A DNA stretch of 64,000 nt from assembly GCF_964204645.1 (NCBI RefSeq), contig NC_134034.1, positions 10,986,962 to 11,050,961 of the forward strand, given 5' to 3'. The translations under genes were made by a program, and so were the position numbers. Origin of the DNA: Tubulanus polymorphus. Its lineage: Eukaryota; Animalia; Nemertea. Positions 16,439-52,673 of the stretch are shown in pieces (the first letter of the stretch is position 1; each line of letters starts with the position of its first letter). A model generated the notes under the pieces. That model searched no databases. It worked only from the letters and a program-made list of their open reading frames with translations, and was not told the DNA's origin.

Positions 16439-17699
16439 TTAAACGATTCCTCGGTTGATATTTGACTATAGATTTAAAGCCCTCTCGGTGCTGGCTGATT
16501 GATACTTAAAAGTGCTGGAGATGATTTGAATATCTTTCGAAAACCTCAGTGCGGTGTATAACGCATATACCGCTATACAGGTGCTGCCATCTTTCGTTAC
16601 AGATACGAACTAATTTCTAATGACTCAATACACGGTGATGCGGTGTACTGGCGAAGTCCATCACCGATCGATACACCGCACTGCGGTGAAGATACATTGC
16701 AAAATGCTGAAAAATTGGAAATGGACTCTTAATTTCTAGTGTCAAAGATTATTGTGGAAGCATTTGAACTATACTTATGAGCATTTTATAACTTGTCCAG
16801 TTTCAGGTTAAACTCAAATTTTTGGCCAACTTTTCAAACTCGACCGTTTTTGCCGTTGAATTTTTCATGAAACTGAACCCTGGGCCGGGTGTACATTTAT
16901 GAAACCCCTGTAATAGACTCTGATGAGATCTCTTCGATCAAGCTGTTTGTTTTGTTAGGAAAGGAAAGTGTTTTCGCACCTGTACGCGAAAGTAACTCGA
17001 AGCGGCAGGAAAAATTCCCACAGAAATCCATCGTTGAATAAAATCTTAAATCACACCCTCGAGAACCGTAGAACTTCGGCGCTGGATCGCTGATAGCTGA
17101 ATATAGGAGCAACTTTTTCGCCTTGTGGACTGGTTCCTATACACGCAGCCCCTCACTGGACTGGTTCAGTAATGTAAATCGATGATCCATTACGTGGTCA
17201 TCAATCTTGCGATAAAACCACAATTGACCGCGGCTGCTGCTGCTGTCTGCCGCAAAAAAAAAACGTTTTATCGCTCAACAATAGTCTCGTTCCGTGGCAA
17301 CGAAAACCATGACAACAATACAAATGTAATATTTATTGGCAGACGCGGGTAGCGGGTAGACTGGTTTATTGGCGTTTTATGTATCCGATGGTAAACAGTT
17401 TTAAGAGTCATTTGACCTGAAATATTGCGTAGTGGTTTCCCTCGCGAGGAACGCATATATCTCATTTTCATCTTATAGTATAAAAAACACTGAATAATGT
17501 TTCACTGAATACATTCACCGCAGACTCTTGTATGGATAATAGATATCATTTATAAGTATATTATTTCTCGACTTATGACTGGATCCGGTTCCACAGTTTC
17601 TGCTGTTATATGGTTTTAGTGGATCTCCGCATCCAGTTCCAGTTTCTATATGACTCTGAACTCAGTTCCACAGTTGTGTTAATTTGACACTGGGTCTAA

Positions 17700-19180: not shown

Positions 19181-20114
19181 GAGCAGGACCCTGTTTGTCT
19201 GTTTGTTTTGGCGTTACGTAGTCGCTTGGATCTTCGTTTCCCACGACTAACGCTATTGGATTATTCATTTAACCTCACAACGACGGGATCACGGCCTTTG
19301 AAGTGTTGCCGCACATTGTAAGCAGCCAACATGACTCGAACCCACTTGTCACTCGGCACTGATAGATACTTCGACATAAAAATATGACAAATGATAAAGA
19401 TTAAAGGATTAAGATTAAAGTAATTATTAAATAACAAAAACCGGAACACTAAGGAAGAAAACAAAGAAGGCAAACGACAAACTAAGGGGATGTAGTCAAG
19501 ATTATAGTAATCAAAAAACAAAGCCCAGAGGGTTCAAAGGCAGACAAACTAAGGGTTAATCAGACAAAAACAAAAGGCAAGAACATCGAAGGGATAATCA
19601 AGAAAACTATCATTCTGATATAGAATTTTTCAATCTTGGCTTCGTTATTGTGGGATTTCTCTCTCGTCATACTTCGACATGGTCAGGTGTATCAGGAATC
19701 AGTTGGTGTGGATACATTGATCAGCCACTATTGTATCAGTAATCGGCAATGTGCTGTTGATACTACGTATCAAGAACGTGGATACGGCGATAACGCGCTG
19801 GTTGGTGTATTATTGATGAGATTCGTGTATTCAGTGCCGGTTCAGTGAAACAGGAAATATTGAATCACGATTCGACGATTCATCTAAATTAAATCGTTCA
19901 CACTTCGCATGATTCCTCGCGACCCCCGCTCCCCCTCCCCCTCTCGCTCCGCTGCGTGATGGTATAAAACTGATTTGAATTACGACGAAACAATGAGTCT
20001 AAATCGATATCGCGTTTAATTAAATGTTTCTGCGTTAATTGGTTAATGCACTGTGTATTGATTTTTAAATGAAACCCCCGCGATTCATTAGCAGCAGATT
20101 CCATCAAATCAGCA

Positions 20115-20510
20115 TCTTACTGGTACCTCTATAGCAGCTAGTGCAGCAGCTCTTGGCTTTACTGGTACCTCTATAGCAGCTAGTGCAGCAGCTCTTGGCT
20201 TTACTGGTACCTGCAGTAGCCGGCACGGCAGCTGTGGGCTTTACTGGTACCTGCAGTAGCCAGCACGGCAGCCCTGGGCTTTACTGGTACCTGCAATAGC
20301 CGGCACGGCAGCTGTGGGCTTTACTGGTACCTGCAGTAGCCGGCACGGCAGCTGTGGGCTTTACTGGTACCTGCAGTAGCCAGCACGGCAGCCCTGGGCT
20401 TTACTGGTACCTGCAGTAGCCAGCACGGCAGCCCTGGGCTTTACTGGTACCTGCAGTAGCCAGCACGGCAGCTGTGGGCTTTACTGGTACCTGCAGTAGC
20501 CAGCACAGTC
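20115..20510. repeat. 40-bp tandem repeat (CTTTACTGGTACCTGCAGTAGCCAGCACGGCAGCCCTGGG)n
   Basis: TTACTGGTAC recurs every 40 bp. Confidence 0.92.
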
Positions 20511-22960: not shown

Positions 22961-24167
22961 AGGTTAACTACCGATCTGTGTCTAATGATTGTTTGAATGT
23001 AAATCAGATTTTACCCGTGATGTGAAATTATTTCACGTTTCGTTAAACAAAGAGATTTATTTCAACATCCGTCCGCCTTCAACGACGCGTGGCTCGAATT
23101 CACAATCGCGAAACTTCAAACGGGAAAACAACTATTTGAAGTTTACACAGAAGCACGATGGAATGAATTCATTCGTTTTATGCTCAATGCATGCACGATG
23201 CAGGGAAACACAGGATGAAACAAGTTTCATCTCGAAAACGCTGTTTACTGAAACTGTGTTTCTCGTATGTACATACGGCACAGGGAAACAGAAACGCAAT
23301 GAAACATGTTTCATCTAGGAAACTTTGTTTCCTGAAACTGTGTTTCTCGTAAATATACACAATACAGGGAAACCTTCAGAAACGTTCTGTTTGTCTTCTG
23401 TTTCCATGTTTCACACACAAAGCATAGCAACACAGAAACACAGAATGAAACATGTTTCATCTCGGAAACTTTGTTTGGACCCTGAGAAACTCTCGGAAAC
23501 ATCGTGTTTCCCTACGTTGATCTTAACTTCGCGCCTCCCTTCGCTGATTTCTGAAAATGTCTGGGTTTAGATTTTCGAGACGATGATATTTAAAACTGGG
23601 CGTTTTGAACGTCTGTAGTTGTATATAAAGACTGTACCAGCGCTGTTGAAACGCATTTTCTCTCTCTCAGACTCCACTTATCGGTTTTATCTCAGTTTAT
23701 GATGTAATCAACACTTAAAGCGTTCGATAATTAATGACTTACATTGATTACACAGGTTTACTGGTTTCAATCAGCTCAGGAGCGCTAGTGATAACTTTTG
23801 AGATTAGTAGCCTTTTTCACAAGGGAGGAGTTATATATAGACTGACAGCTAGGTTGAGAGTTAGGCTGAGGGGGGAGATAGGCTGAGAGTTAGGCTGTGG
23901 GGGGGGGCAAGGTTTAGAGTTTGGAATGGCGAACCACCCGACTGAGGGCGGTCGCTGTAGTTTGGAACTATTTCCAATATGGCCGAAACTGAGGCTGAGA
24001 GTTAGGCTGAGGGGGAGCTAGGCTGAGAGTTAGGCTGAGGGGGGAGATAGGCTGAGAGTTAGGCTGTGGGGAGCTTGGCTGTTGGGGGAATTAGACCTAG
24101 AGTTTGGCTGTGATTGCTGATTCGGCATTATTCTCAAAACTCATGTGAAATTGTTTGTATTTTGCAG

Positions 24168-27100
24168 ATTTTTTATACAGAAATGAAGATTTCTACGTGA
24201 ATCATTGTCACACAGCGAGCGGTTTTACGGTCTGTAGTCAACATGTTTCATTGTTGCATCATCGACGTAAAAGAGCGGATACCGGCGGCAACAATACAAC
24301 AATACCCGCTCCTACGTTACCTGTAGCGACCGAGAATCCGCCTGCTTTCACTTCACCGCGGCAACCGTCGACCGTAACCGCGGGCAACAATGCGTCGTCG
24401 TCGATGGCGACGACGGAGCAACAACAGCGGTCATCGTCCCCGTTGCCGACAGCGACCTCGACAATATCGACCGGTAAACCAACGACGACCTTGAAGCCGA
24501 CGACGCCGGCGCCACCTACGTTATCACCGTGGAACTTCACCGTTCTAGAGGTACCCGATATATGAAAGAAACCTCCTTCAATCCCCCTATGACATCATAA
24601 TCTCATTGCGGTATCGTGTTTGTATTTCAGGATAAGAACCACACGTATTACGTATCTCAACATTTCGCTGCTGAAAAAGCGAAACCTTATTTAATCGATA
24701 TCAATAACATTCCAAACGGCAAAGTGAAAACACATTTAGTTCTGTCAGAGTCGCACCGGACAGCAGGGGTGAGTACTCATACTCAGGGGGCAGCAGGGGT
24801 GAGTACTCATAGTCAGGGCCGCAGCAGGGCTGAGTACTCACATTCAGGGCCGCAGCAGGGGTGAGTACTGACACTCAGGGGGCAGCAGGGGTGAGTACTG
24901 ACACTCAGGGGCAGCAGGGGTGAGTATTCATACTCAGGGGGCAGCACGGGTGAGTACTCAGACTCATGGGGCAGTACGGGTGAGTACTCAGACTCAGGGC
25001 TGCAGCAGAGCTGAGTACTCAGACTCAGAACAGCAGGGGTGAGTACTCAGACTCAGGGCCGCAGCAGGGCTGAGTACTCAGAGCTGCAGCTGCAGCAGGG
25101 CTGAGTACTCAGGCCAATGGGCTGAATAAAGATGTAAATAAGCTTGGATGGTGTTAAGCAGGGGTGAGTATAACTCAAATATGGACACTGGGCGAGGGGG
25201 GATGGTGAATCGGTATCGAGTTGAATTCATTCATGTAAAAATGAAATCAATATTTAAAAATGAAAACATTTTGATGAAACTCTGCTTTGTACGACGCGTT
25301 ACAAATCCACGTTCTATTCATGCATCGCGAACAACGTAAATGAATTTTCTGTGTTTCTCAATTTTTGTAGACCGTCAAATTATCGTTCAAATTCTCTTTT
25401 TACGGGCACGAAATCGAACAAGTAACCATAGCAACGGGAGGTGAGTACTATACGGCGTCGGTCTACGGCCTGATTCTCAAATCGTTTTATTTGATTTCCT
25501 CCAAATTAATTTAAAATCAATTCAATTTTACTCCCTCTCTCCCTCTTCATCCCTCCCTCTCGTTTTGACTCACACTATCGTCCTCTCCCTCTTTCCTCTC
25601 TTTCCCTCTCACTCTCCCCCTCTCACTCTCTTCTCTCTCCCTCTCACTCTCTTCCTCTCCCCTCCTCTCTCCCTCTCCCAAGAAATATTCAATTATTTTG
25701 AAATCGTCGTCTGCCAATCAATTTAAAACGGTGCTGATTGTTGAAAACGGAAAGTATCCAATAGCGACTAAACTGCAATTTCATCAGAAATTCCCCGCCC
25801 CCTCGAGATGAAAACACTCGAAAACTTCGACGATCACAATCATTTTTTAATTTTCAATTTCTCCACGATTTCTGACTTCGAAATCTCGATTATATCCATA
25901 GAGCGTTTAGTGTCGGGTTTTATGACAGTGTTTAATTGGAATTCGAATGTCATCTTAACTTCGGGCTTCAGGCTGTAGACGGATAGAGTTCACTTCGGTC
26001 TAACGAGTATTTTCTAACGCTCTCGAAAGAGTTCAGTCTGAGATGATAAGAAAACTCTACGCGAAGTGTTCGTAACATTAGCGTGCCGTTGATTCACAAT
26101 CGTCTGCTAGGCCGATACGGTAAACTGCGTTTCAAGTCGAGATGAGAATTTAGAAAAAAAGAACAAAACATTGATTACCGCCATCAAAAGGGCATACATT
26201 TTACCAACACGCCATCTATTAATTTTTCGCCATATCAGTAACTATATTCAGCCGCCCACTTTAATTTTGAAAAGAAAACATATTTTCACAATATTCATTT
26301 TTCCCTATCTACCTACGCTACAAAATTTTGGGCATAAACCGTTAACAAACATATTATTTCACTACGAAATTGTGAAAATAAGTAAAATGCAACATAGAAT
26401 AGAGCTTCGTACGCTAAAAACTCTGAAGAGGAATCGTGCCCTTGTCAAACAAGCTCCTGTTTTCGAGGTAAACCACTTTGCCCGTGGGCAATTTATTTGC
26501 CATATTAGTAACTAACTATATAAATTAGTAACGAGTCTATCTGTTACTGACTTTTACCGAATCTATCTGTTACCGACTATGAGTGTATCTGTTACTTTAT
26601 CTGTAATTATAATTAACTGTAACGGTAACTGTAACAGTAATTGTAATTGTGAATGTAATTTCACTTGCTCTATACTGGTCTCATCTGTGATGATAGTTAT
26701 ATAATGTATATCAAATTACACGATGATGATAGAAGATTAGATCAATGTATTTGGCTTCATTTAATTTGTTGTTCGTTTGAGTGAAGCCTTAAAAATTCTC
26801 TCCGAGTTGATTTAATCACTCGCCCCGCGGCGGTGGCGGCTTATACCACCGCAATTTGAGTCGAGCAGATCATATCAGAGAACATATCTGCCTCCATTAA
26901 TCCCCCTACGACATCATCAAATTGATCTATGGCACTTCCAGAAACGATGTCCGCCTCAATAAATCACCCTATGACATCATCAAATTCAATTATCGACACT
27001 TCCAGAAAAGATGGCTGCCTCTATAAATCCCCCTATGACATCATCAAATTGATCCGAACCCACTTCCAGAAAAGATGGCTGTCTCCATAAATCACCCTAT

Positions 27101-30100
27101 GACATCATCAAATTGAATTATCGACACTTCCAGAAAAGATGTTTGCCTCTATTAATCCCCCTACGACATCATCAAATTGATCTAAAGAGACTTCGAGATG
27201 ATGTGATCCGTAGATTCATGCAAAAGATGGCTGCCATCACATAAATCCCCGGATGACATCATCACCTTGATCTGTAGACCATACAAGTGAAGATGGCTGT
27301 CTCCATTAATCCCCCTACGACATCATCAAAAACAATCTATCTGACCAAAAAAGATGTCCGCCGCCATCAATCCCCATATGACAATGCAAAGATCCATCTG
27401 ACCTAGAAACTCTGTTGCTACCAGAAATTCATGATGATTGAAAATGTTGTTTTATTTTGCAGGATTTTTGTATATGAGTTCATTTCTGCACCAGTGGTTG
27501 ACAGCGACGCAGTATATCGCTCCACTGATGGCAAACTTCGATACCAGAATCGGAGACAGTTCGCATATAAAATACGTCGATAATGGTATGTAACATTTAT
27601 ATATCATCCAATCAGCAACGTCGACCCTGTCATATCATCCAATCAGCATCCTCAAACCGGTGATATCATCCAATCAGTAGCCTGGACCTAGAGATATCCA
27701 ATCAGCATCCTCAAACCAGTCATATCATCCAATCAGCAGTCTGGACCCTGTCATATCATCCAATCAGCATCCTCAAACCAGTCATATCATCCAATCAGCA
27801 GTCTGGACCCTGTCATATCATCCAATCAGCATCCTCAAACCAGTCATATCATCCAATCAGCAGCCTGGACCCTGTCATATCATCCAATCAGCAGTCTGGA
27901 CCCTGTCGTATCATCCAATCAGCATCCTCTGCTGCCGAACTGGTTCCGAAGTTTCCAATGAAATTTGATTTGAATCGGTTTATTTCGAATGTTTCAACAA
28001 ACCGTGCATTTTAAACCACAACCAAGATCTATTGAAGTCGAAGATTTGATTCCTCGTATGGGCTCGTAGATATTGTTCCTATATCTGTAAACTTACCACT
28101 CGAAACTCGTTATTTTCAGGCACCCTTTTTGTCGTTCAATGGGAAAATGTCCACCTTAAAGATCTTGCTCCCGGTAGGTTTTTTCGAATGGATAACGAAA
28201 TTACGACCCGATTATTTACCGCAAAATTATATCGTCTTGAACGAAATCGTTTTGAAAATGTATTTCTTAATATATTGAATTTATTTTTTCATCGCAGTCG
28301 GATCGTTCAATTTCCAAGCAGCATTATTCAAATCAGGAAAAATTATATTTTCATATATCAAAGTAAGTTTCAAACGATATTGCCGTCTCGTTGCCAGCGC
28401 CATCTGGTGTTGCCGGTATCTCGTTGTTTTTCGTAATGGCGCCCGGGAGAGGTAAGGTTTGATTTTCTATCGTTTTCCGTTCGTTTAGGTTCCGTACGCG
28501 ATACAGAATATTCCGGTCGGTCAACATCCGGTTAAAGTGGGCGTTTCAGACGCGTTCTACAACGACACCGATCACTACGTACCTCAAGGAAGTAAGTTCG
28601 GTCTCCTCTCCCCTCCTCCTCCCCCCATCTCCCGACCGGCGTATGGGGAAATCTGTAATCCGAAAGAGTTGAAAATTTCTCAAGTTTTGATAAATTCGTG
28701 TCCGTTTAAGCCTTTCAGTGCCGACCAATTGATACCCTATAGTGCCGGAGTTAATTTTAAAATGTTGAAAATTCTGCCCTAGTGTGTTTAATAACGGGAA
28801 TAGCACTATAGTGCGTCTACACCGCGGTGCGGTGTATTGTTAGTTACTAATATTTCACTGTTTGACAGGTGCTGACATCTTTCAATAGAGATTAAAACTA
28901 ATCAATTACTAATGATACCAATACATCGCGATGCGGTGTACTAGCAAAATACATCACCGATTTATACACCACACTGCGGTGTAGAGGCATTGAAAGAGTA
29001 AAGTCGGACAAAATTTCTCCGTGATATTGATATCAGGGTTAACTTGTATGCAATTCATGCATAGGATCAAAAAAATATTGCTATAAGCATCGAAGATAAA
29101 TGAGTAAACTGGTTATTTCTGTTGTTCAACAATAGTTAAAGTTTTCTCGAAGGTAACCTGTCATTCCTCGGTTCCGCCAATACAGGGTTAATTCGAACGG
29201 TATTGTTTTTTTTTTGGATTCTACTCTTTCATTTGCGAGTTTTGAATTGCAGAATTTCGAACGCGTAAAATACAGGAGTATCATCGAATAGAGATCCAAG
29301 GCAGTTTAATAGTATCGGGTTCAGTGATTGTACTGAACCCTGTTCCAAGTAAATAAACCGATCAATAATCCCCCCCTTGTTTTACCGTCATATATACTGA
29401 TCGTTGTCTGATCGCATGCCTTCTATGCTTATACAACATGAGGCAACCTGTCCAGAGACCTGCCTCTGAAAATACTGAACTGTACCCCCTGACGCACAAA
29501 GAGCTGTCAACCATCACCGATTGCTAGGAACAGCCTCTGAAAATACTTAACTGTACCCCCTGACGCATGCAAAGCTGTCAACCATCCCTGATTGTCAGCA
29601 ACAGTCTCTGAAAATACTTAACTGTCCCCCTGATACACACAGAGCTGTCAACCACCCCTGATTGTCAGTAACAGTCTCTGAAAATACTTAACTGTCCCCC
29701 CTGACGCACAAAGAGCTGTCAACCATCACCGATTGCTAGGAACAGCCTCTGAAAATACTTGACTGTCCCCCCTGACGCACACAGAGCATCCTTGATTGTC
29801 AGCAACAGTCTCTGAAAATACTCACCTGTTCCCCCCCCCCCCCGACACACACACACAGAGCTGTCAACCATCCTTATTGTCAGCAACAGTCTCTGAAAAT
29901 ACTCACCTGTTCCCCCCCCCCCCCCCCGACACACACACACAGAGCTGTCAACCATCCTTATTGTCAGGAACAGTCTCTGAAAATACTTAACCCTCCCTCC
30001 TGGCTGTCAACAATCCCTCATTGTCAGGTACAGTCTCTCACTATTTCCCCTGATGTAACAAGTCTTGGGTAATGGTTTATTATCCCCTGATTGTCAGGAA

Positions 30101-33100
30101 CAATGTCATTAACATAAATTATAAGCATAGAAGGTTTTTTTTTTAAATTCTTGTCTCATTTAAACCCATAGAATGCAACAGATTTTACTTACGAGTTTTA
30201 TTTTTTTTGTACTGTAGACTTTCCTTTACCACAGCGCAGAGCAGTCTCAAGACTGAAGTTATGTGCGAGTTCAGAGGCTATTTATACGGTCAAAGTCTAC
30301 CAAAACAATCAGTCATGACTGGCGTCTGTGGCGTCAAAGCAGATTCTACTGTAATATTTGAAACCCTGCATGGTTGTATCTTATATAGCCTAGAACTCTG
30401 GAGCCAGTCGTGCAGCAATGGCTTAGACTTAAGACCAGTCTAAGACCATCTTAATTGTATGGTGTATCAGTGTTCTCCCCGTGCTAGAATTTTAAAGGGG
30501 CTGATTTCAATTAGCATTGATAGAATTTTGAAATCCACTCTCTGGTAGGTGCAGGAGATATTTCATAAATGGCCATTCATTTGGGGTGGATGTAAAAATG
30601 AAATAGGGTGGTCGCCCCTCTAAAACCTGTTGCGGAGAACACTGCTTATCTAATTAAGATTGAAGATCACTTCCTGGACTTGCATCACGACTGGCGCCTG
30701 GCCCCCCTGCATCCTTCCAACCTCCATCGCTCGTGTGGCATGTTTTTTCATTTACGATTATTTTCGATTTGTTTTCTGTATTTGTAGGGCGGCGGACTCG
30801 TCTGATTCGCGAATACCACCGAGTCGCTTTATCATATAAATATATAGTCAGTGGCGCCGTCTATGTTTTAAATCCCGTCGAGAGTATGTATTAGTGTTTG
30901 GGATCGTGGATAGGGGGCGCTTGAATACGGTTTACGTAGTTGTGGCTCGGTTGTCATGAGCGGGATCCAGTTTGAGCAGTCGGTCCTCCGTCGGTTTAAA
31001 ACATTGAAAATGAATGAACGTTACCACTAGAGTCAAATTTCACCGATGGCCGTGAAACTGTGTCCAGGTTTTTGATTGAAGTTGTGGCAGCGGTTCTTTG
31101 TCTAAAACGTTACCAGCTTTTTTGATAATTAAACCGTACTATTTCTTCTCTTACCGCACCGCTCTACGCATCTGCACTTCACAAGTTCGATTATGACGAT
31201 CGGAAATTGATTTCACTCTGAACCTTTCGTTTTTCATCTAAATGTTTTTCTAATATATCATCGTTGTCGAAATCTATGTGTAATGTTTATATTCTATCTG
31301 TAATATCTGCTGTTTGTTAGGTACCGGTATAATACCTACGTGTTCAGCTATACTCAATGAACGTTAAACAACTCAGCCAAATATCTTCCGATAAAATTCT
31401 TCGATATCAATTTCCAAAATTTAAGGGATTTCATCTTGGTAACGATGATAATGGTAATAACGCAGAGATTCCAGCTGATATTTTTAGAGATAGGCCTAAT
31501 AATAATAATGATAATGACAATAATGATACTAAAGGTAACGATGAAAAAGATAAAGACAATGATAATGATGATAAAGATAATGATAAAGACGATGATAATG
31601 ATGATGACAATAATGATAGTAAAGGTAACGATGATAAAGATAAAGACAATGATAATGATGATAAAGATAATGATGATAAAGACGATGATAATGATAATGA
31701 TAATAATTATGGTAATGATACTGATGATAACTGATGTTTGTTATTTCAGCATGTTTAATGCAGAAGGACTGCAGCACGTGTTTAACGAAGAGTCTTTCGT
31801 TCAGCTGTTCGTGGTGCTCCGCGTTGGAGCACTGCTCCGACGGTATGGATCGTAAACGTCAGTTGTGGTTCAAGAAAGGCTGCGCTAAACAGGTACGTCG
31901 CCATAGCGATCATTGTCGCCGTCGTGAACGAGGGACCGTTCATGCTGGGTATAATGATGAATGTTATCCTTGCATGTTTGCGTTTGTTCACGCTTTTAGA
32001 TGCATGAAATGTGTTTTTTACAAGGTTTTCTCAGTGTTGAAATGGATATCGATATACGTTTTCTAGATGTAATTTTTATTGATTTCCTAATGAGATTCAT
32101 GTAGACTTACGTAATTAGGTTTCGATCGGTTTCTACCGATTCTCGAATTCTCTTCTGGCGCATTCGACCGGAATACGCTCAACCTATTCCGAAATAGCAT
32201 AATCTGTAAACCCGATAGAAGCGGCCGGTAGAGAGTTTGTAATCTGTAAACCTGATAGAAGCGGTCGGTAGAGAGTTTGTAATCTGTAAACCCGATAGAA
32301 GCGGCCGGTAGAGAGTTTGTAATCTGTAAACCTGATAGAAGCGGCCGGTAGAGAGTTTGTAATCTGTAAACCTGATAGAAGCGGCCGGTAGAGAGTTTGT
32401 AATCTGTAAACCTGATAGAAGCGGCCGATAGAGAGTTTGTAATCTGTAAACCTGATAGAAGCGGCCGGTAGAGAGTTTGTAATCTGTAAACCTGATAGAA
32501 GCGGCCGGTAGTTAGTTTGTAATCTGTAAACCTGATAGAAGCGGCCGGTAGTTAGTTTGTAATCTGTAAACCCGATAGAAGTGGCCGGTAGAGAGTTTGT
32601 AATCTGGCATCGCTATTCCTAAATGGGAATACATCCAATCAAAAGTTGCATTTGCTAGCTTTGAAGCTTTAAAAAATGTAAATAGATGTAACAGAGACAT
32701 TGAATGATTACCATTAAACGAGTAAGAATTTGGATCATTTTAAAATGTAAATAGATGTAACAGAGACATTGAATGATTACCATTAAACGAGTAAGAATTT
32801 GGATCATTTTAAGTTTATCAAAATCGAACATGAAAAAAATTGTTCTCATCTTGCTCATGTATACTTCTGCTAGTTTATCACCAAGTGACCTTGACCTATC
32901 CTGCATGATTATTAGAAATTTCTGTCGAACCGTATTTTTATAGGGATTGAAAGTCGCTTCGATGTGTAATCGCGCGACAACAGTGGCGCCATCTCGTAGC
33001 AAACTGACTACGTATCGCAGGCCACAACCTGCCACCGGTTCACCCACAACTCTTACAAAAACCACTCAATCAACCTCTAAACTACTCGGTACCACTTGGA

Positions 33101-36100
33101 AAACTACCGGTCACGTGACTTCTAGGAAAACTACCAAGGATATGAATACTTCCCGGAAGACGTCTGCTCGTATGGCGACTTCCAGGAAGACAACTCCTGC
33201 TCCTGAACCATCCGTTACAACTCAGACTACTCGGAAAACTAGCCACCTGGTGGTCACAATGTCAGGTACCAAACGACCGATGAGACGAACCACGCCATCT
33301 CTGAAACGGTCAACAGCAACGAAACTCAAACCAACAACAATTACTGCGGGCAAAACTTCACCATTATCGTCATTGACAACGGGCTTAGGAAAAATCGGTG
33401 GTTCACCAGCAGCGCAGACGGACGGATGTGTCGTAGACGCTGATGTAACTATGGAGATTTGTAGATCCTTGAAGAAAAGATGGCCGCCTCGTTTAATCCT
33501 CCAATGACATCATCAGCACTGAAAACCTCAAATTCCGGAGCGGCCATCTTTTTTGGAAAGGGTTCTTATCTACCTGCTTGACTGATTGGCTATTTCATCA
33601 TCAGGGGCGGATCCGTACAGTTACTGGCCACACCCACTCAACTCCTAATATGGCAATTTTCAACAACCTTGACACATTGGAGGACAACATGGATCTGACC
33701 CCTGAGTTTTCAAATACTGACTCCGACACACCACTTTTAAAGCGCACTTCTGGATTGATTAATCTTTCTCGTACTGTTTCATTTGCTTCCTAAAAACATT
33801 CTAATATTTCATCACGAGCATTCACTCATAGTCGTAGATACATGTTGCCAGTGTAACTGTGTGAAATCATGTATTCATCAATATCTCGTATCGTGTAATA
33901 GATTTACTAATTGTGATGAGTTGTAATAAATTTACTAATTTCGATCCCCAGGACGCTGTTTTTAACTATAATCTATGACCGGTTTCAGGCGCGTTGGAAG
34001 CAATTTTTGAATGCCGCGACCAATCGCCGATTTTTTGACGAGGTTCTAATATTCAGCCGCGGCGAATTTACTTCAACTTTGTCAAAATCATAGTAGAGAA
34101 AAAAAAACGTCATTCAGTAAATTATTGCCACGGCGTTCACCCCTGCAGTCACTACGGTTCCAACGGCCACTAGTTCTGGGGCCAGTCAATGGCCTTCAGT
34201 CGTTAACGTAATCTAGTGAATTAAGACTGGTTTAAGCCCCTGTTCAAACTCAATTCACGGCCGTACATTTATTATAGACTGCATTTCTAAACTGAAGAGC
34301 CATATTTTAACCCGCACAACTCTGCGCGTCCTGGGGGTATAAAACAATTCGTGCGTTGTTTTTCTGCGTTGTCAAAAATTTCCTCTTCGTGTATTTTTTT
34401 TGATGTTATGTATTGTCAAGAAGGATAAGGTCAAGGTCGTAATGTTGCTCGAAGTCCAGTTCATTCAGTTAATGTAATTAGTAAAGATGAGATTTTGTGT
34501 CGATATCGAGTCCCCGATAATTCGAAGAATATTTCGTTCGTCTCGTTCTAATTCTTTTTTCGTCTCTATTTTCAGAACAACAAAACATGTCCAGGTAAGA
34601 TGAGAGAGATTATTTAAAGTTTGTCAGTAGTTAGACGGTACGCGTACAGCTCTTATCGCACTGTCGAAATACTCGCGCACTGCTACTGCGGTTATCGGTC
34701 GTTACCACCGGGGCCTAATTCTGAACGGTTTGAACGTGGTGACGAGGGTTCGACTCCTAAGGACGTTAGTTCGTTTTGCAATGATTTAACGCTCGCGCGA
34801 GTCAAATTTCTAACAATCGCTGCAGTTGTTGAGAAGTTGGTTAACCCTTTCCGTGCTGACCCTATAGTGCTTGAGAAAATGTGCAAATTTGGGAAAATTT
34901 CACCCTAGCGTGTTGAATAACAGGAATACCACTATAGCGCGTCTACACCGCGGCGCGGTGTATCGTTAGTTACTAGTATTTCACTATGTTTGACAGGTGC
35001 TGCCTTATTGAGAGATTATCACTAATTAAATCAATACACTGCAGTGCGGTGTACTAGCAAAATCCATCACCGATTTATACACCGCACTGCAGTGTAGATG
35101 CACTGAAAGGGTTAACCAGTAGATAGTTAACATAGTGACAATTAGAAGTTCATCGAGCATTGAAAATTGGTCTGGGCTTCTCGTGGCCTACCCACAGAAC
35201 AATTAGGACTAAAGGGGTATTTTCTGGATGCCATTTGAATTAATTTTCTGTCGTTTTAGAATTTTCTTGGCGAAAAAAAGTTTCCTGATTTTTTGTAGGG
35301 CACATTCGAATACTGAGGGGTCCACCCCCTAAATCCGCCCTTAGGTTGTCACCCATATCGCTTACATTTTGCTCAAGAAATGTGAAAATCGAACAAAATA
35401 AAATCGAACTGAATAAATGAATATCCAGGGTAGTAAAAGACGTGCGTTTGAGAACTAGGCTCTGAGGGGTTCCCTAACCGTTTGTCTCACACACCGAGAG
35501 TTTACAGCAATCGAGATCGTTCTTCTTTTTTAGATACTACTAATTTACGGACCAGCCGTCCACCAGGTGGCGCTACCTCCACACGGTCTCGTACTGGTAT
35601 AGATTACCTAAATAATATATAAGCTTAATATTACATTTCACAGTTTCTGATCGATATCTGTTCTCAATCTTATGCGAATCGAATTGAAGCTGTTTTCTTT
35701 CGTCTGATTGCTGGAAACTCTTTTCTACTGTGTCTATTGCATATATTATTACGAACACTTCTGACGCGAAATTGCTTTTCTGCCGAATAAAAATAAACAT
35801 AAATTCCATGAATTGGCAATAGGTGACAGCACTAAGACACTGAACAGTTGAGCCTGGTATCGCGAACAAGTTTTATGATTTTGGGCTTGGGCTGATTATG
35901 GGCTTGGACCGATACCAGGTTTGGACTGATACTTTAGACTCAGTTAACTGAACAATTAATTGCAATTGCCGATTCATGAAATTTTACAAATAACAAAATG
36001 ATGTTCTTCGTGACCTTGACCTATATGTGCGCACTGAGTGACCTTGCTTGTGACCTTGTCTTTCAGCGGCGTCGGCTAGCAGACGGATATCTTCATCGTT

Positions 36101-39100
36101 GACCAGTTGTATGTGTCGACTCTCTCACGCTTCTAGTGTTCGTTCGTGTTGTCGTTATCGATACCTTTAGAATATTTCTAGTAGACACCGCTAGAGGGCG
36201 CCGCAAGTCCTTAACCTGCCTTCCAAATCAACAAAAATAATCTCCAACAATTGTCGAGTAACTTTTCGCCAGTTCTGGTTAGATTCAGGGTCAGTTTCTA
36301 AGGGGGGTTTGGGGGTGGCAAATGGCAAATGGCTGAGAAAGTGTCCCTTTTCAACTGCCCATTTCCTTGAAATAGAACTAACCCTCAAGAAAGCTTGGCA
36401 CGCACGGGCCCGAGTTTTACCGTCAAGGTTAAGCCTAAAAACCGTATGAAGCTTATTTCAGTTTTTTGGCTTATCTCTTACGGTATGAAACCACTTTCAT
36501 TCTCGAGCCAAGTACGCGGTACTGAGCCTCGCGAGTATTGATACTCGGTACTCTGATATAGCTTTCCTGTCCCGAATTTAAGCTGCTTTCTCTTTTGTTA
36601 CAAAAAAGTCCGCGGATATCATTTCCACAAAACGGCGGTATTAGTAACAAAATACGGATGATTTTCCGCCAATTTTTTTTGAATCGTCTTAATGATTATC
36701 GTCTGCTGGGAACCTCAGATTTCGGAGATTCAGTTGAAAGACTTGCGGTGTTCGCGTGTTGATATTTTTTTTTCTAGAGAGCATGTCGAAATAATAAAGA
36801 GATTGGTGCAGAGCGTTTAGGCTATTAAAAAAAATGATACCTTATTTCTCCTAATCGGGGGCAAGACATTTTTGTAAAACTGCCACAAAATTTGTTCATT
36901 TCTATAACTGCCGGGTCTGTTGTTGTTCGCCTGATCGCGGTTTGAAAAAAAGTGTCGTACAGGGTAGATAGGCGGCCGACCGGGGTCAACTTAAAGCTCG
37001 GCAGATGGAGAAACAAAGGTATCAATTTCTTTTACGAGTATAGATGGCAGCTCTGCATGAATCTCTGAAATAGCCAGAATTCACGAGTGATATTTGATTT
37101 GGACAGTCTTTGCGTAAATTGCACACCTTCTTCTTTAGAATTAAGATTTCATTTGAATGGGAATCTGGCTAGGATTTAGAAATTCCTTCGTTTTTATCCC
37201 AGTTGCGACACCCCCACCTCCTTCCCTCCCTTCTCCCTCCTTTCGTGACATTTTCAGGCAGCAGTTTTCATTATTATTATGATTTCAGCATATTTTATAT
37301 CGAGAATTATGCCCCTCCGGCGACAGACGGCTCCTCCTGAACGGCAGACGGAATATTGGAAAACGACGATTTTTTTTTTCAAATCGAAATAAACAAATGA
37401 GGCGTCAACTTTTCTATTATTAGACTCCGATCAATGAACACGACAACATATTTTTTGTTGATATTTCTTCGTATCGTATATGAATATTTTGCCACCGATT
37501 TCCGATATTCCTTCCCTCTCGCTATCGTTGAAATCGGTTTGAGAAACGCATGTTTATTTACTGCTGTTAGCTTCGAGCTCACCGACGAAATAAATTGAAA
37601 AAAATATACCGAGCTGCCAACTGTTCCTGATTATCAGTATTTGTTACTATTTCACAGCGAGAAATACTGATTTGATTTGTTTGATGCATACAGAAATATG
37701 AAACATGTTACTGATGGTTTTACCCCCCTTGATGACTGATTAATTTGAACATTGTCATATTGCAATGAAATTTTGCCGAAAAAATTCAATTTGTTACTGA
37801 TAGCATTTTTCAGAGGTTGGCAGCCCTGAAAACCTAACGATAGGTTTTTGACAATGACAATGTTTTAGAGATACTTCCAGAAAAATGACTGCCTCCATAA
37901 ATCCCCCTATGACATCATGAAATCATCAGGGTGATTATGACGGTTGCCATCTTTGGATAGAAGAGGTAACCTGCCTCCATAAATCCCCCTATGACATCAT
38001 GAAATCATCAGGGTGATTATGACGGTGGCCATCTTTGATAGAAGAGGTTACCTGCCTCCATAAATCCCCCTATGACATCATGAAATCAGGGTGGTTGTGA
38101 TGGTTGCCACCTTTGGATAGAAGAAGTTACCTGCCTCCATAAATCCCCCTATGACATCATGAAATCATCAGGGTGATTATGACGGTGGCCATCTTTGGTA
38201 GAAGAGGTTACCTGCCTCCATAAATCCCCCTATGACATCATGAAATCATCAGGGTGATTATGACGGTTGCCATCTTTGGATAGAAGAGGTTACCTGCCGC
38301 CATAAATCCCCTTATGACATCATGAAATCAGGGTGGTCGTGATGGTTGCCATCTTTGGATAGAAGAAGTTACCTGCCTCCATAAATCCCCTTATGACATC
38401 ATGAAATCATCAGGGTGATTATGACGGTTTCCATCTTTGGATAGAAGAGGTAACCTGCCACCATTAATCTCCCTATGACATCATGAAATCAGGGTGGTCG
38501 TGATGGTTGCCATCTTTGATAGAAGAGGTTACCTGCCTCCATAAATCCCCCTATGACATCATGAAATCAGGGTGGTCGTGATGGTTGCCATCTTTGATAG
38601 AAGAGGTTACCTGCCTCCATAAATCCCCCTATGACATCATGAAATCAGGGTGGTCGTGATGGTTGCCATCTTTGATAGAAGAGGTTACCTGCCTCCATAA
38701 ATCCCCCTATGACATCATGAAATCAGGGTGGTCGTGATGGTTGCCATCTTTGATAGAAGAGGTAACCTGCCACCATAAATCCCCCTATGACATCATGAAA
38801 TCGTCTATTGTCTATAGACTCGTTATTGGGGGGATTTACGGTGCAAAAACTCTTAGAGAAACTTTAAAAAACTGATTGTTTATTAATGTTCCTGATACTA
38901 ACATTTTTTCCATCCTGATATAGAATCCTCGATATTTATTCATTTGGATTTCTCGATTCTTTCATCTGTTTTTAGCAACTCTTTTCTTTCGTTAACCGTG
39001 TTTAGACGATATTCATATCGGGGGTCAGTTGTTTAGAGTAATTACGGTAACGTCGAAATGCAATATTCGCTCGCACCCTCCACATTTAGACCGGGAGCTC

Positions 39101-40667
39101 GCATCCAGTATCTGCACCCCTTAAATAGGGCATATCATATAACTTAAAGGAGCTTATGAATTTAAAATTTTTAGGTATCAGTTTAATATTTGGCATTTCC
39201 CTGTAAAATATCAGGGTAATTAAACATTTTAGGGGGAGGGGGCGAGTACGTGCAACCTTCCTGTGTATCCGCCGCTGTGGCGCCCCCTGCATTAAACAAC
39301 TGCCCCTCTGATATTTGTAGCTTCGAAGTTTCCATATTTTTTCCTTCGCGCCCGTTCTCACTTTTATCGTTCATTTATTGCGACGAATTCGACTAATTTT
39401 TTCGTTTTTTTTTCTTTTTCGTTTCTATATTTTCAGCGAATATGATCGGAGTCGTGGTGGGAATATTTATAATCGTGTTTGTTGTTTGTATAGTAGTAGG
39501 ATGGGTGTGGTACGCGTATCGAAATCCTACGTCACGTTCCGGAATGTGGTTGATGGAAGTAAGTATCCATACAGCTGCTGCTGCTGCTGCTGGTATTACT
39601 GTTCCTGATTTTTTGATCCAGTCGCCAACTGTTCCTGATTTTCAGTATTTTGTCCCAAAAAGTGCTGATGCGATTTGTTTTATGGGTACAGAAATATGAA
39701 ACATGTTTTACTGAGGGTCTTAACTGTTGATTACTGATTGATTTGAACAGAAATATGAAAGATGTTACCGAGGGTCTTACTGTTGATTACTGATTAATTT
39801 GAACAGAAATATGAAAGATGTTACCGAGGGTGTTACTGTTGATTACTGATTAATTTGAACAGAAATATGAAAGATGTTACTGAGGATCTTACTGTTGATT
39901 ACTGATTAATTTGAACAGAAATATAAAAGATGTTACTGAGGGTGTTACTGTTGATTACTGATTAATTTGAACAGAAATATGAAAGATGTTACTGAGGGTG
40001 TTACTGTTGATTACTGATTAATTTGAACAGAAATATGAAAGATGTTACTGTGGGTCTTACTGTTGATTACTGATTAATTTGAACAGAAATATGAAAGATG
40101 TTACTGAGGGTGTTACTGTTGATTACTGATTAATTTGAACAGAAATATGAAAGATGTTACTGAGGGTCTTACTGTTGATTACTGATTGATTTGAACAGAA
40201 ATATGAAAGATGTTACTGAGGGTCTTACTGTTGATTACTGATTAATTTGAACAGAAATATGAAAGATGTTACTGTGGGTCTTACCCCCTCGATAACTGAT
40301 AAATTTGAACAGAAATATGAAAGATGTTACTGTGGGTCTTACCCCCTTGATTTCTGATAAATTTGAACAGAAATATGAAAGATGTTACTGAGGGTCTTTC
40401 CCCCTAGATTACTGATTAATTTACGCACAAATATGCTAAAGGAGTCACATCGTCAAAGTGTTTGCGATTCAAAAACGCCACCCATAAAGTATCGAACCAG
40501 TCAGTGTGTCATAGGTCGGTATTGATAACTCTCATGATTTATTTCTATGATTTCAGCACCGTCCAAGTCAGTTAAAAATGAAGATGAAATTCTGGAAACG
40601 CGGCGATTCCGGCGGCGAGAAATACCAAGTGTCGGTCGAACCATCCGGAACGGAGAGCGTGGCGTAA
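24168..40667 (+). CDS. PLXDC2: Plexin domain-containing protein (PLXDC1/2, TEM7/TEM7R-like), multi-exon; signal-peptide exon not identified
   Basis: Exons with GT-AG boundaries and consistent phase: 24168-24550, 24631-24768, 25371-25440, 27463-27585, 28120-28173, 28298-28362, 28489-28591, [29253-29348 or 30788-30883], 31750-31892, 32944-33444, 34576-34594, 35534-35596, 36067-36108, 39437-39558, 40557-40667 (TAA). Family motifs: LSESHR, LSFKFSFYGH..VTIATGGF, LTATQYIAPLMANFD, HPVKVGVSDAF, EYHR; PSI domain CLMQKDCSTCL..CSWC..CSDGMDRKRQLW..GC; TM helix followed by YAYRNPTSRSGMWLMEHRPS; RRKR furin-like site. Confidence 0.93.
24760..25112 (+). repeat. ~30-bp minisatellite containing the exon end plus splice donor (CAGCAGGG|GTGAGTACTC)
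   Basis: About 12 copies, starting inside PLXDC exon 24631-24768. Confidence 0.92.
26880..27400. repeat. Dispersed/tandem family AATCCCCCTATGACATCATC...AAGATGGC; also at 590-850, 37875-38800, 55518-55590 and 63600-63950
   Basis: Shared core in many copies and both orientations. Confidence 0.9.
27600..27930. repeat. ~30-bp intronic repeat with an ATATCATCCAATCAGCA core
   Basis: About 11 copies. Confidence 0.9.
28710..28998. mobile_element. piggyBac-like MITE copy
   Basis: Same internal sequence as 16158-16438; TTAA at the left end. Confidence 0.75.
29253..29348 (+). CDS. PLXDC alternative exon A (FRTRKIQEYHRIEIQGSLIVSGSVIVLNPVP)
   Basis: ttgcag acceptor, gtaaat donor, 96 nt, phase 1-1, contains the EYHR motif. 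Confidence 0.85.
29450..30110. repeat. ~68-bp degenerate tandem repeat (CTCTGAAAATACTTAACTG...GAGCTGTCAACCATC)
   Basis: About 8 copies, lying between the PLXDC alternative exons. Confidence 0.85.
30235..30372 (+). CDS. Possible third, divergent PLXDC alternative exon (QSSLKTEVMCEFRGYLYG...GVKADSTVIFETLH)
   Basis: accacag acceptor, 138 nt open in phase 1-1, weak donor (gttgta, or gtatct 3 nt later), loose similarity to exons A and B at both ends. Confidence 0.4.
30788..30883 (+). CDS. PLXDC alternative exon B (RRTRLIREYHRVALSYKYIVSGAVYVLNPVE)
   Basis: ttgtag acceptor, gtatgt donor, 96 nt, phase 1-1, aligns to exon A without gaps. Confidence 0.88.
31490..31730. repeat. (GAT/AAT)n low-complexity tract
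   Basis: Trinucleotide-rich intronic sequence. Confidence 0.9.
32200..32605. repeat. 40-bp tandem repeat, about 10 copies
   Basis: AATCTGTAAACCTGATAGAAGCGGCCGGTAGAGAGTTTGT. Confidence 0.95.
34845..35111. mobile_element. piggyBac-like MITE nested inside the palindromic GCTGCAGTTG family element
   Basis: TTAA|CCCTTTCCGTGC...GCACTGAAAGGG|TTAA; the flanks match the 11100-11330 element. Confidence 0.8.
37609..37828. mobile_element. hAT-like MITE (GCTGCCAAC...GTTGGCAGCCCTG)
   Basis: Inverted termini; internal segment homologous to the 39620-40430 array. Confidence 0.6.
37875..38800. repeat. ~80-bp tandem repeat, about 11 copies
   Basis: CCTCCATAAATCCCCCTATGACATCATGAAATC...GGTTACCTG. Confidence 0.95.
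39690..40430. repeat. ~56-bp tandem repeat, about 13 copies
   Basis: GAAATATGAAAGATGTTACTGAGGGTCTTACTGTTGATTACTGATTAATTTGAACA. Confidence 0.95.
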
Positions 40668-42243
40668 TAACAGCTCAACACTGTCCCCCCTCCCTATTCC
40701 CCATCTGTTCCCCCTCTCCCCCCCCCCCACGGTTTTCGAGATGTTACTACCGCACTAGTGCTAGTGTTTTACTCATATCGTATTATTGATTAATGTGTAT
40801 AGTTTTGTGTAATATGAAGTTTTTCGACCTTGACCTCTTACTGTTGAATATCGTCTGCCAACGAACAAAACGAAAGCACGTATCATTAATTCCTTACAGA
40901 TCTTATTTCATATATATGTGACGATATTTTTATTCGTTTGAGTTTACAATTTTGTATCGAGACGAGTTGTCTACGAGTCCGCCGAGTCCTGAGACGTCGG
41001 TCATCGATTAAGATCGATATGAGTTTGGATTGGGTCTTATTTCAGGACACCGGTCTTGATTTGTTAGATCAGTTTTAAAACCAAAATGAGCTTAGACTGG
41101 TCTAAAATTGCTAAATTGGTTATAGAACCAAAACGAGCTTAGACTGGTCTTAAGTTGTTGAATTGGTTATAGAACCAAAATGAGTTTAGACTGGTCTTAA
41201 GTTGTTGAATTGGTTATAGAACCAAAATGAGTTTAGACTGGTCCAAGATCTAAGCTTTTTAACCACAAAATGAGTGTAGACTGGGTCTAGGTCTAGGCCA
41301 TATTCGGATTTCTGCTTTTTCACGCTAGCTTTATCGGTAATTTATTTATAGCTTTAATATTTATTAATATATATATATATTTATTATTTATTGTACAGCG
41401 CGTTGAAGAGACGAAACCTCTCTTTCTGCACGCGTTCGAATCTCAGTGTAATTTATAGTTTTTTCGTCCATATTCCAAGCGGTACCTCCGTGCAACGTTT
41501 ACTTATTTCATAATCTTCGTTATGTAAAACATTCCAGATTTAATATTTTCAGGGTCCAGAATCTGATTTCTTTTTTCGTCGAAACGATTCGAATCTCGGT
41601 GATAATTTTACTGAATACATATCACAACTTGATATCCATTATGCTACGAGAGCAGGGTTTATTTTCTACGATACAGATTGGGCACTCTACCCCCAGTTCT
41701 TTCAGATCTCCAGAATCTTTTAGTTATATTTCCGTTCATGTATCGGTTGATTTCGCATTATCGAACTCGGCTTTGAATTAATCGTTGTTTCGATCGACTA
41801 CGAGTCAATTGTAGAATTTAGAGATTCAGTCTACTCCAGAGAATTTTGACACGTAGGGCGTCTGATTTCACGGGCAGTTCATTTTCATAGAAATGTGGAA
41901 ACTTTTTTGAAACGGGGCTCGAAGGTAAAAGGGTCTCATTGTGAAGACCAACATTGTGTCCCCACCCTGATTTAGTTGTTGTGACCCCCACAAGAAGAAT
42001 AACTTTCATTTCCTAAGTAAGCAATGTTGCGAAATGGAGTCTGCCGTCTCATTGAACTTGATTAAAGTAGACTCTTGTATCTGGGGTTGACTGTTATTAA
42101 ATCAGTAATCGCGCTATAAAGCTCGATTCCGACGAAAATTAACTCATGATTTATATTTATACCGCGTTAAGAAATATTCACTTTATCCGCCACGTGGTAT
42201 CAATGTAATATCATAGTAATATTTATTTAATTTGTTCTGTAAA

Positions 42244-50059: not shown

Positions 50060-51052
50060 ATTGAATATTTAGTGCGTAGAAACCCCGTTAGGGCACCGTG
50101 AGGTGCTGCCACCTAGTTCACGTGAGAGTGACTACTGTCGAGGGTGAAGAATGTATGGAAAAATGAAATTATTATGAAACTTGTACTGATTTTTCCTTGC
50201 TGTAACAAGAAATGAATGAATCTTAAACTTGTTTTTTTCAAGATAGATTCAATTCCCACCATCAAAAGGGCTTCGCTAGTTCAAACACATCTGATTATAT
50301 TTGTGTTAATAGGTCATTTAGACAACGTATTTCAAGTTCGAATAGTAATTAGAAACGACTGTAAGACTGTTGTACATTATGGAATAGCTGAAGGGCCATT
50401 GCCAGTTGCTAGTTGCAAAAAAGCGAAGTTTTATAAACAAATGAACAAAACATAACTTTTATTTGTGAAAATATCGATATCCAATATCAGAAACAATTGC
50501 TGAAATATGTTCCTGGCGCGTGCCTTCATCGCTTCCATACCAAATATCTTATCTCCTCGACAAATCCTCCGATTGCATCATTATGAATGAAATATAGTAA
50601 TAAGTAACTGATTGTTAATCAAAATACATAGGCCTAAATCTTTTTATTTTCAAAACTTAAAATACCTCACGATTCATAAATTATAAATAAATCTTTTTTT
50701 CTTAAATAAAATGGAATAATATATAAGGCTTTTTATTTAAGCAACTCGAATCAACACGGATCGAAATGCCGATTTATTTAAGCAACGCGCCTACAACGAT
50801 TTGCCTACATTTGTATGAATCATATGATTTAAAAAACCAATTATCAACACAATTAATACTGTTCTACTAACACAACACTGATAATCACACTAATGACTGG
50901 AATGGTATCAAATATTTCGTTCAGAACGGCACCTACAGGTTGGCACATGATTTATTTGTAGTCGCCAACATTTTGGCTTTAAATTCAGCTGACTGGCATA
51001 ATTGAATATTGCGTATTGTATCTGTTGGAAGCGGTTTCTCTTTGTCGATAGA

Positions 51053-52673
<1,621 letters not shown>

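What the first reader, a model, noticed from the sequence alone, without database searches (positions are those of the whole stretch)
29253..30883. Duplicated, probably mutually exclusive exons in the PLXDC (TEM7-like) ectodomain
Seen: between the HPVKVGVSDAF exon and the PSI exon lie two 96-nt, phase 1-1 exons with intact splice sites. They align without gaps (FRTRKIQEYHRIEIQGSLIVSGSVIVLNPVP vs RRTRLIREYHRVALSYKYIVSGAVYVLNPVE). About half the residues differ, while EYHR, IVSG and VLNPV are kept. Established: vertebrate PLXDC2 has this segment only once (RRRTIYEYHRVEL...TPLPT, recalled). Inference: including both would duplicate a domain segment, so they are probably mutually exclusive and diversify the ectodomain. 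I am not aware of this being described for PLXDC.
Basis: partly seen in the sequence, partly recalled or inferred. Interest (0 to 1): 0.85.

Follow-up and report, generated by a model that had tools for sequence, protein, structure and literature searches.

The report
Duplicated alternative exon in ribbon-worm PLXDC
The only PLXDC receptor gene of the ribbon worm Tubulanus polymorphus holds two old, intact copies of one 96-base exon, so it can probably make two receptor versions, but no RNA data were available to show that the unannotated copy is used.

Summary
Exons A (29253-29348) and B (30788-30883) are both 96 nt and phase 1-1, with AG/GT splice sites. They lie between the HPVKVG exon and the PSI exon of the single PLXDC gene of Tubulanus polymorphus.

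- **Similarity:** 18 of 31 residues are identical (E 2e-12). Nothing else in the 268-Mb genome matches.
- **Age and selection:** The duplication is old, and both copies were kept as protein. Synonymous sites are saturated (pS 0.94) while pN is 0.37 (Fisher p 3e-6). Exon A fits a family profile better than B does (31 vs 20 bits).
- **Annotation:** The one RefSeq protein (XP_074658690.1) contains B only. A is unannotated.
- **RNA:** No RNA covered the gene, so use of A and mutual exclusivity remain inferred. Frame, intron length, splice-site type and RNA pairing do not enforce exclusivity.
- **Relatives:** Owenia has three intact copies of this exon and three of its upstream neighbour. RefSeq isoforms of Lineus and Dreissena swap duplicated neighbouring exons, never using both copies.
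- **Structure:** In an AlphaFold model, the two duplicated exons form the two arms of one long beta-hairpin next to the PSI domain.

Verdict: a new member of a known kind (tandem exon duplication), of moderate interest. This scan has already noted many exon pairs of this kind in other genes of this genome.

The parts
27463..27585 (+). T exon of the PLXDC gene (..TATQYIAPLMANFD..), 123 nt, single copy in this genome; used as search query
28489..28591 (+). H exon (..HPVKVGVSDAFYNDTDHYVPQG), 103 nt, phase 0 to 1, donor GGA|gtaagt. It encodes the first arm of the predicted beta-hairpin. Single copy here, but duplicated in Lineus, Owenia and Dreissena.
29253..29348 (+). Exon A, 96 nt, phase 1-1, acceptor ..gagttttgaattgcag, donor CAA|gtaaat. 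Intact reading frame. Absent from the RefSeq protein. Scores 31.1 bits against the family profile of this exon.
29349..30787 (+). A-B intron, 1439 nt. Holds a minisatellite (about 29440-30000) and an interspersed repeat (about 30418-30453). Too long for steric exclusion.
30788..30883 (+). Exon B, 96 nt, phase 1-1, strong pyrimidine tract, donor AGA|gtatgt. This is the copy present in RefSeq XP_074658690.1 (residues 352-383). Scores 19.6 bits against the family profile.
31750..31892 (+). PSI-domain exon, 143 nt, phase 1 to 0. It joins in frame to A or B, or directly to the H exon.

Best explanation
An old tandem duplication in the Tubulanus (palaeonemertean) lineage doubled the 96-nt exon that lies just before the PSI domain of the single PLXDC gene. 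That exon encodes the second arm of a long beta-hairpin, the loop after it, and the last strand before the PSI domain. Both copies have been kept as working coding exons. B, with the stronger 3' splice site and a place in the RefSeq model, is the default. A is a regulated alternative that replaces B, giving two receptor ectodomains. These differ on one face of the hairpin arm (positions 353, 357, 359) and in the following loop (365-370), while the packing residues I358, E360, Y361, H362 and R363 and the motif IVSG..V.VLNPV stay the same. Shown: the duplication, its age, selection on both copies, B-only in the public model, and either/or use of duplicated neighbouring exons in relatives. Inferred: that A is spliced in at all, that A and B substitute for each other, and that the swap changes what the ectodomain binds.
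For: Both exons have intact frame, phase and AG/GT sites. A vs B gives E 2e-12. Nucleotide identity is only 46/96, with 26 of 31 third positions changed; pS is 0.94 against pN 0.37, Fisher p 3e-6. A keeps every family-invariant residue and scores higher than B on a profile built from 78 homologues (31.1 vs 19.6 bits). RefSeq XP_074658690.1 has B only. A and B are sisters in a tree of this exon (SH-aLRT 91.9), and the gene is single-copy. The Lineus H1/H2 exon pair, which RefSeq isoforms use one at a time, has the same signature (pS 0.84, pN 0.35). Dreissena isoforms combine two T and two H exon versions in all four ways and never use both copies of one exon. Owenia has three intact copies of this same exon. 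In the AlphaFold model (pLDDT above 90 over 165-430), strands 333-348 (H exon) and 351-365 (E exon) form one hairpin. None of 185 homologues carries the segment twice.
Against: No RNA evidence exists for exon A. The runs labelled with this species laid no contig on any exon. The protein collections hold no A-containing protein or fragment. RefSeq lists a single isoform. Nothing enforces exclusivity: 96+96 nt or 0 nt both keep the frame, the intron is 1439 nt, all sites are U2-type, and no RNA duplex beats shuffled controls. A has a purine-interrupted pyrimidine tract and lacks G at donor position +5. No closer relative of Tubulanus was available to test whether the pair is conserved.
Confidence: 0.55

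Rival explanations
1. Exon A is a cassette, not a substitute. It is included together with B (A+B), or all four in-frame forms (A, B, A+B, neither) are made.
For: Both exons are multiples of 3, so every combination stays in frame. The 1439-nt intron permits A-to-B splicing. No competing RNA structure was found. Oysters and scallops insert an optional 16-17-residue cassette at this very H/E junction, so the hairpin tip tolerates insertions.
Against: A is a homologue of B, not a linker. A+B would repeat two beta-strands of a compact domain. None of 185 homologues has the segment twice. In Lineus and Dreissena the duplicated neighbouring exons are used one at a time, although frame enforces that in Lineus, where both H exons were measured.
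Confidence: 0.2
2. Exon A is no longer used. It is a silenced relic that still looks intact, and B is the only working copy.
For: The only public model skips A. No RNA or protein fragment holds A. A has the weaker pyrimidine tract and an A at donor position +5.
Against: With synonymous sites saturated, a neutral copy would also be saturated at replacement sites (about 0.75) and would probably carry stops or lost splice sites. Instead pN is 0.37, the frame is open, and both splice sites are present. A also matches the family profile better than B. Silencing could only be recent.
Confidence: 0.15
3. A is the main exon and B the minor one, meaning the RefSeq model chose the wrong copy without RNA support. 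This is the same mechanism with the roles reversed.
For: A is closer to the family consensus. No RNA from this gene was visible to me, so the RefSeq choice may rest on prediction alone.
Against: B has the better 3' splice site. I have no evidence either way on expression.
Confidence: 0.1

Closest known systems
Lineus longissimus PLXDC2-like gene, RefSeq isoforms X1-X6 (XP_064648317-22)
   Same: Same gene family and same phylum. It has a tandem pair of diverged exons in the same part of the ectodomain, with the same divergence signature (pS 0.84, pN 0.35). Isoforms carry one copy or the other.
   Different: The duplicated exon is the upstream neighbour (HPVKVG exon, 97 and 94 nt), so double inclusion breaks the frame. 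The EYHR exon is single in Lineus.
Owenia fusiformis PLXDC gene (CAH1789013.1, locus L004)
   Same: The same EYHR exon is multiplied: three intact phase 1-1 copies of 102, 105 and 105 nt with AG/GT sites.
   Different: It has three copies, not two, plus three copies of the HPVKVG exon. The copies group by species rather than with Tubulanus A or B, so the duplication is probably independent. I had no isoform or RNA evidence there either.
Dreissena polymorpha PLXDC1-like, RefSeq isoforms X1-X46
   Same: Annotated isoforms swap duplicated exons of the same domain in all combinations and never use both copies.
   Different: The swapped exons are the TATQYIAPLMANFD exon and the HPVKVG exon. The EYHR exon has one version in the isoforms seen. 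The genomic DNA could not be fetched because the gene is too long.
Classical mutually exclusive exon pairs from tandem exon duplication (human ATE1 7a/7b, SCN alpha-subunit 5a/5b; surveys PMC8373072, PMC5740500)
   Same: Adjacent homologous exons of equal length and phase that would replace one structural segment of the protein.
   Different: In those cases exclusivity is demonstrated, and for ATE1 it is explained by competing RNA structures (PMC7797038). Here neither the exclusivity nor a mechanism is shown. PLXDC is not named in the main text of PMC8373072.

Membership tests
PLXDC (TEM7-like, plexin domain-containing) receptors | Full-length similarity to named PLXDC1/2 proteins across animals | tested here: met
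   The window's exons translate to P0005 = XP_074658690.1, 'plexin domain-containing protein 1-like [Tubulanus polymorphus]'. It is 40-51% identical to PLXDC homologues of molluscs, annelids, insects and vertebrates.
PLXDC (TEM7-like, plexin domain-containing) receptors | PSI (plexin repeat) domain after the nidogen-like domain | tested here: met
   Pfam PF01437, E 6.8e-5, 23.6 bits against a cut-off of 23.1, on exon 31752-31892. The cysteines are invariant in the 48-sequence alignment.
PLXDC (TEM7-like, plexin domain-containing) receptors | Single transmembrane helix and a conserved short cytoplasmic tail | tested here: met
   Helix 440-466 in the model. The TM exon is 39436-39558, and the tail motif (YAY.NP..SG) is shared with homologues.
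Tandem exon duplication | Adjacent exons homologous to each other, with the same length and phase and intact splice sites | tested here: met
   These are the only two matches in the genome.
Tandem exon duplication | Both copies under purifying selection | tested here: met
   pS 0.94, pN 0.37, Fisher p 3e-6. Both copies match the family profile.
Mutually exclusive exon (MXE) cluster | Mature transcripts contain exactly one of the copies | not testable with these tools
   No RNA run or contig covers the gene's exons. Only a B-containing public protein exists.
Mutually exclusive exon (MXE) cluster | Exclusivity enforced by reading frame (double inclusion or skipping gives a premature stop) | tested here: not met
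   Each exon is 96 nt, so A+B and neither both stay in frame. By contrast, the Lineus H exons are 97 and 94 nt.
Mutually exclusive exon (MXE) cluster | Exclusivity enforced by a too-short intron or by U2/U12 incompatibility | tested here: not met
   The A-B intron is 1439 nt. The donors are gtaaat and gtatgt and both acceptors end in ag, so all are U2-type.
Mutually exclusive exon (MXE) cluster | Competing intronic RNA pairings (docking and selector sites) | tested here: inconclusive
   The best intron-intron duplexes reach -31 to -32 kcal/mol, within the range of shuffled introns (-29 to -38). A 15-nt perfect inverted repeat at 29419-29433 / 30120-30134 flanks a minisatellite and has a weaker third partner at 29082-29095. 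No related species was available to test conservation.

The most novel reading that the evidence does not exclude
The long beta-hairpin beside the PSI domain of PLXDC is a recognition surface that spiralian animals have diversified repeatedly and independently by multiplying its exons. Tubulanus has 2 E copies, Lineus 2 H copies, Owenia 3 H and 3 E copies (up to 9 ectodomains), and Dreissena 2 T and 2 H copies. One receptor gene would then give a small combinatorial set of ectodomains with different partner specificities, doing what PLXDC1/PLXDC2 gene duplication does in vertebrates.
Probability: 0.3. Interest if true: 0.6.

Novelty: new member of a known kind. Interest (0 to 1): 0.4.

Why it matters
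PLXDC1 and PLXDC2 are poorly understood receptors. Reported partners include PEDF and nidogen (cited in PMC7959344). ADGRD1 binds through the PSI domain (PMC7902839). A rhadinovirus gH/gL complex also binds them (PMC7959344). No solved structure matched their nidogen-like domain.

Selection has kept alternative versions of one hairpin next to the PSI domain in several spiralian lineages. That points to this hairpin as a functionally important and probably ligand-facing element, and it supplies natural variants to test.

For genome annotation, it shows an intact, selected exon missing from the RefSeq model of T. polymorphus, and several unannotated exon copies in Owenia. The mechanism itself, tandem exon duplication giving alternative exons, is well known. 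This scan has already flagged many such pairs in this genome.

Tried and rejected
**RNA evidence.** The look-up of sequencing runs found DNA holders only. Laying contigs of the four other runs labelled with this species put nothing on any exon. The only matches were to intronic interspersed repeats at about 28766-28900 and 30418-30453. This is absence of data, not absence of expression.

**Protein collections.**
- The 90% cluster of the RefSeq protein has one member.
- A search restricted to residues 300-440 found no closer relative than oysters at 50% identity.
- A 135-residue piece (H+B+PSI), meant to catch transcript fragments, found nothing.
- A search for Owenia isoforms found none.

**Competing RNA structures.** The duplex scan of the three introns did not beat shuffled controls. 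The 15-nt inverted repeat is most simply read as the ends of a repeat-bearing insertion.

**Fold comparison.** Foldseek against the PDB gave no match at E <= 0.001.

**Apparent exon arrays.** The arrays in a moth protein (P0001, 6-7 copies) and a sea-urchin protein (P0002) are near-identical repeats with intron read-through. I rejected them as assembly or annotation artefacts.

**Loci that could not be fetched.**
- Pecten, Dreissena and Solemya: the gene range is too long.
- Mya and Liolophura: not on record.

The A isoform was therefore neither folded nor searched. The B isoform was taken as the public protein that the search returned.
Full report
**What is there.** The window comes from the ribbon worm Tubulanus polymorphus. 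The identification was confirmed when the gene's exons matched RefSeq XP_074658690.1, 'plexin domain-containing protein 1-like [Tubulanus polymorphus]', 514 aa, at 100%.

The gene runs on the + strand from about 24150 to 40670. Reading the DNA gives these exons:
- the H exon, 28489-28591 (..HPVKVGVSDAFYNDTDHYVPQG, 103 nt, ending with one extra base)
- exon A, 29253-29348 (cag|AA...CAA|gtaaat)
- exon B, 30788-30883 (tag|GG...AGA|gtatgt)
- the PSI exon, 31750-31892 (Pfam PSI, E 6.8e-5)

A and B are both 96 nt and phase 1-1. They complete the same split codons and align without gaps. Eighteen of 31 residues are identical (BLASTP E 2e-12). Six-frame searches of the whole 268-Mb assembly with A, with B and with the highly conserved T exon find only this locus. 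The gene is therefore single-copy and the pair is not a dispersed repeat.

**Age and selection.** At the DNA level the copies are only 46/96 identical. Twenty-six of 31 third codon positions differ, against 11 each at first and second positions. Nei-Gojobori proportions are pS 0.94 (saturated) and pN 0.37, with Fisher p 3e-6. The flanking intron sequence shows no residual similarity.

If A had drifted neutrally for that long, its replacement sites would also be saturated, and it would probably have lost its frame or splice sites. Instead A keeps the family-invariant I, E and Y, and the nearly invariant H and R. On a profile built from this exon in 78 homologues, A scores 31.1 bits and B 19.6 bits. 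Both copies have therefore been maintained as coding sequence for most of their history.

In a tree of this 32-residue segment, A and B are sisters (SH-aLRT 91.9). Both lack the N-x-T/S sequon found in many, though not all, homologues. This fits a duplication inside the Tubulanus lineage. With 32 columns, however, concerted evolution cannot be excluded.

**What is known about use.** The only public protein for this gene contains B and skips A, and its 90% cluster has one member. I could not obtain RNA evidence:
- No listed holder of the stretch is on record as an RNA run.
- Contigs of the four other runs labelled with this species lie only on intronic interspersed repeats, never on an exon.
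- Searches for transcript-derived proteins or fragments with A found nothing.

That A is spliced in, and that A and B exclude each other, therefore remain inferences.

**Is exclusivity enforced?** I tested four known mechanisms:
- Frame: not enforced. 96 nt is a multiple of three, so A only, B only, A+B and neither are all in frame.
- Steric hindrance: not enforced. The A-B intron is 1439 nt.
- U2/U12 incompatibility: not enforced. All sites are GT-AG of U2 type.
- Competing RNA pairings: no support. The best intron-intron duplexes (-31 to -32 kcal/mol) fall inside the range for shuffled introns. The one perfect 15-nt inverted repeat (29419-29433 / 30120-30134) flanks a minisatellite and looks like the ends of an insertion.

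B has a clean pyrimidine tract. A's tract is interrupted by purines, and its donor lacks G at +5. That fits B as the default and A as a regulated minor exon, but the argument is soft.

**Relatives.** I scanned six PLXDC loci with profiles of the T (TATQYIAPLMANFD), H (HPVKVG) and E (EYHR) exons.

| Species | T copies | H copies | E copies |
|---|---|---|---|
| Tubulanus polymorphus | 1 | 1 | 2 |
| Lineus longissimus | 1 | 2 | 1 |
| Owenia fusiformis | 1 | 3 | 3 |
| Ridgeia piscesae | 1 | 1 | 1 |
| Haliotis asinina | 1 | 1 | 1 |
| Lymnaea stagnalis | 1 | 1 | 1 |

- The three Owenia E copies (102, 105 and 105 nt) are all phase 1-1 with AG/GT sites.
- In Lineus, RefSeq isoforms X1/X3/X5/X6 carry H1 and X2/X4 carry H2, never both.
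- The Lineus H exons are 97 and 94 nt, so frame enforces exclusivity there.
- In Dreissena polymorpha, 17 distinct proteins drawn from isoforms named up to X46 combine two T versions and two H versions in all four ways, never using both copies of one exon.
- The same T pair appears in Mya arenaria.
- Oysters and scallops have an optional 16-17-residue cassette exactly at the H/E junction.
- All duplicated pairs share one signature: pS 0.67-1.04 and pN 0.22-0.46. That includes the Lineus pair, which RefSeq isoforms use one at a time.

So the Tubulanus pair is one case of a recurrent pattern in spiralian PLXDC genes. For the neighbouring exons, either/or use is already annotated.

**Structure.** I made an AlphaFold2 model of the public B-containing protein with a 48-sequence alignment. 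It is confident (pLDDT above 90) over residues 165-430.
- The H exon supplies strand 333-348.
- The E exon supplies strand 351-365, which pairs with it as one long hairpin. The tip of the hairpin is the exon junction.
- The E exon then gives a short loop and strand 375-381, which leads straight into the PSI domain.
- A and B differ non-conservatively at 353, 357 and 359 (alternate positions on the strand), in the loop 365-370, and at 377 and 383.
- The intervening positions and the last strand are kept.

From the sequence pattern and the predicted secondary structure, I infer that the swap changes one face and the loop of the hairpin without disturbing its packing. Exposure was not computed. 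The H and E duplications in the different animals thus vary the two arms of the same element.

In mouse Plxdc2, the adjacent PSI domain is sufficient to bind the pentraxin domain of ADGRD1 (PMC7902839). No solved structure resembles the nidogen-like domain.

The A isoform was neither folded nor searched.

**Verdict.** The best reading (0.55) is an old, selected, substitution-type alternative exon pair, with B as the default. The rivals are:
- A as a cassette added to B, or free combination (0.2)
- A as a recently silenced relic (0.15)
- reversed roles, with A the main exon and B the minor one (0.1)

Full-text searches found no paper describing duplicated or mutually exclusive exons in PLXDC, and PLXDC is not named in the main text of a survey of human tandem-exon substitutions. 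The mechanism is a familiar one, RefSeq already shows it for neighbouring exons in two relatives, and this scan has flagged many such pairs in this genome. I rate it a new member of a known kind, with interest 0.4. The more interesting possibility, at about 0.3, is that the hairpin is a recurrently diversified recognition surface.

Noticed in passing
window 24760-25112: Directly after the donor of the exon ending at 24768, the intron starts with about a dozen tandem units that each repeat the exon end plus the splice donor (..gcagggg|gtgagtactca..).
   Followed up: no
window 29440-30000, with 29419-29433 and 30120-30134: A minisatellite of roughly 80-nt units lies inside the A-B intron. It is bracketed by a perfect 15-nt inverted repeat, and a 13/14 copy of one arm lies at 29082-29095 upstream of exon A. 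It is probably an insertion with terminal repeats. As an RNA pairing it is no stronger than chance duplexes.
   Followed up: partly
window 31440-31725: A GAT/AAT-rich microsatellite-like stretch gives an open D/N/K-rich frame and ends about 25 nt before the PSI exon's acceptor. Read laying skipped it as a repeat.
   Followed up: no
window 32944-33504 (+): A 187-codon open frame rich in T, S, K, R and P lies in the intron after the PSI exon and is absent from the RefSeq protein. Lineus and Haliotis PLXDC proteins have an extra stretch between PSI and the membrane (T- and P-rich in Haliotis), so this could be an optional stalk exon. Splice sites were not checked.
   Followed up: no
window 49436-50068 and 52110-52706 (- strand), with second exons near 48473-48890 and 51056-51803: Two tandem copies of a gene for a short-chain dehydrogenase-like protein ([12 protein letters not shown]..). 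By my recollection it looks sepiapterin-reductase-like. No family search was run.
   Followed up: no
L004 (Owenia fusiformis CAIIXF020000007.1) 16843-17573 and 19238-20293: There are three intact copies each of the HPVKVG exon (94, 97 and 97 nt; the H2-H3 intron is only 58 nt) and of the EYHR exon (102, 105 and 105 nt). The deposited protein uses the middle copy of each, and the others are unannotated.
   Followed up: partly
P0001 (Choristoneura fumiferana KAI8431204.1) and P0002 (Lytechinus variegatus XP_041456386.1): These gene models contain 6-7 near-identical tandem repeats of the TATQYIAPLMANFD exon, in the urchin with intron read-through between them. They are probably assembly or annotation artefacts, or very young tandem repeats.
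   Followed up: partly
window 28766-28900 and 30418-30453: These intronic stretches match dozens of contigs at 90-99% in two runs labelled with this species (X8, X9). They are interspersed repeats present at many places or transcribed elsewhere.
   Followed up: no
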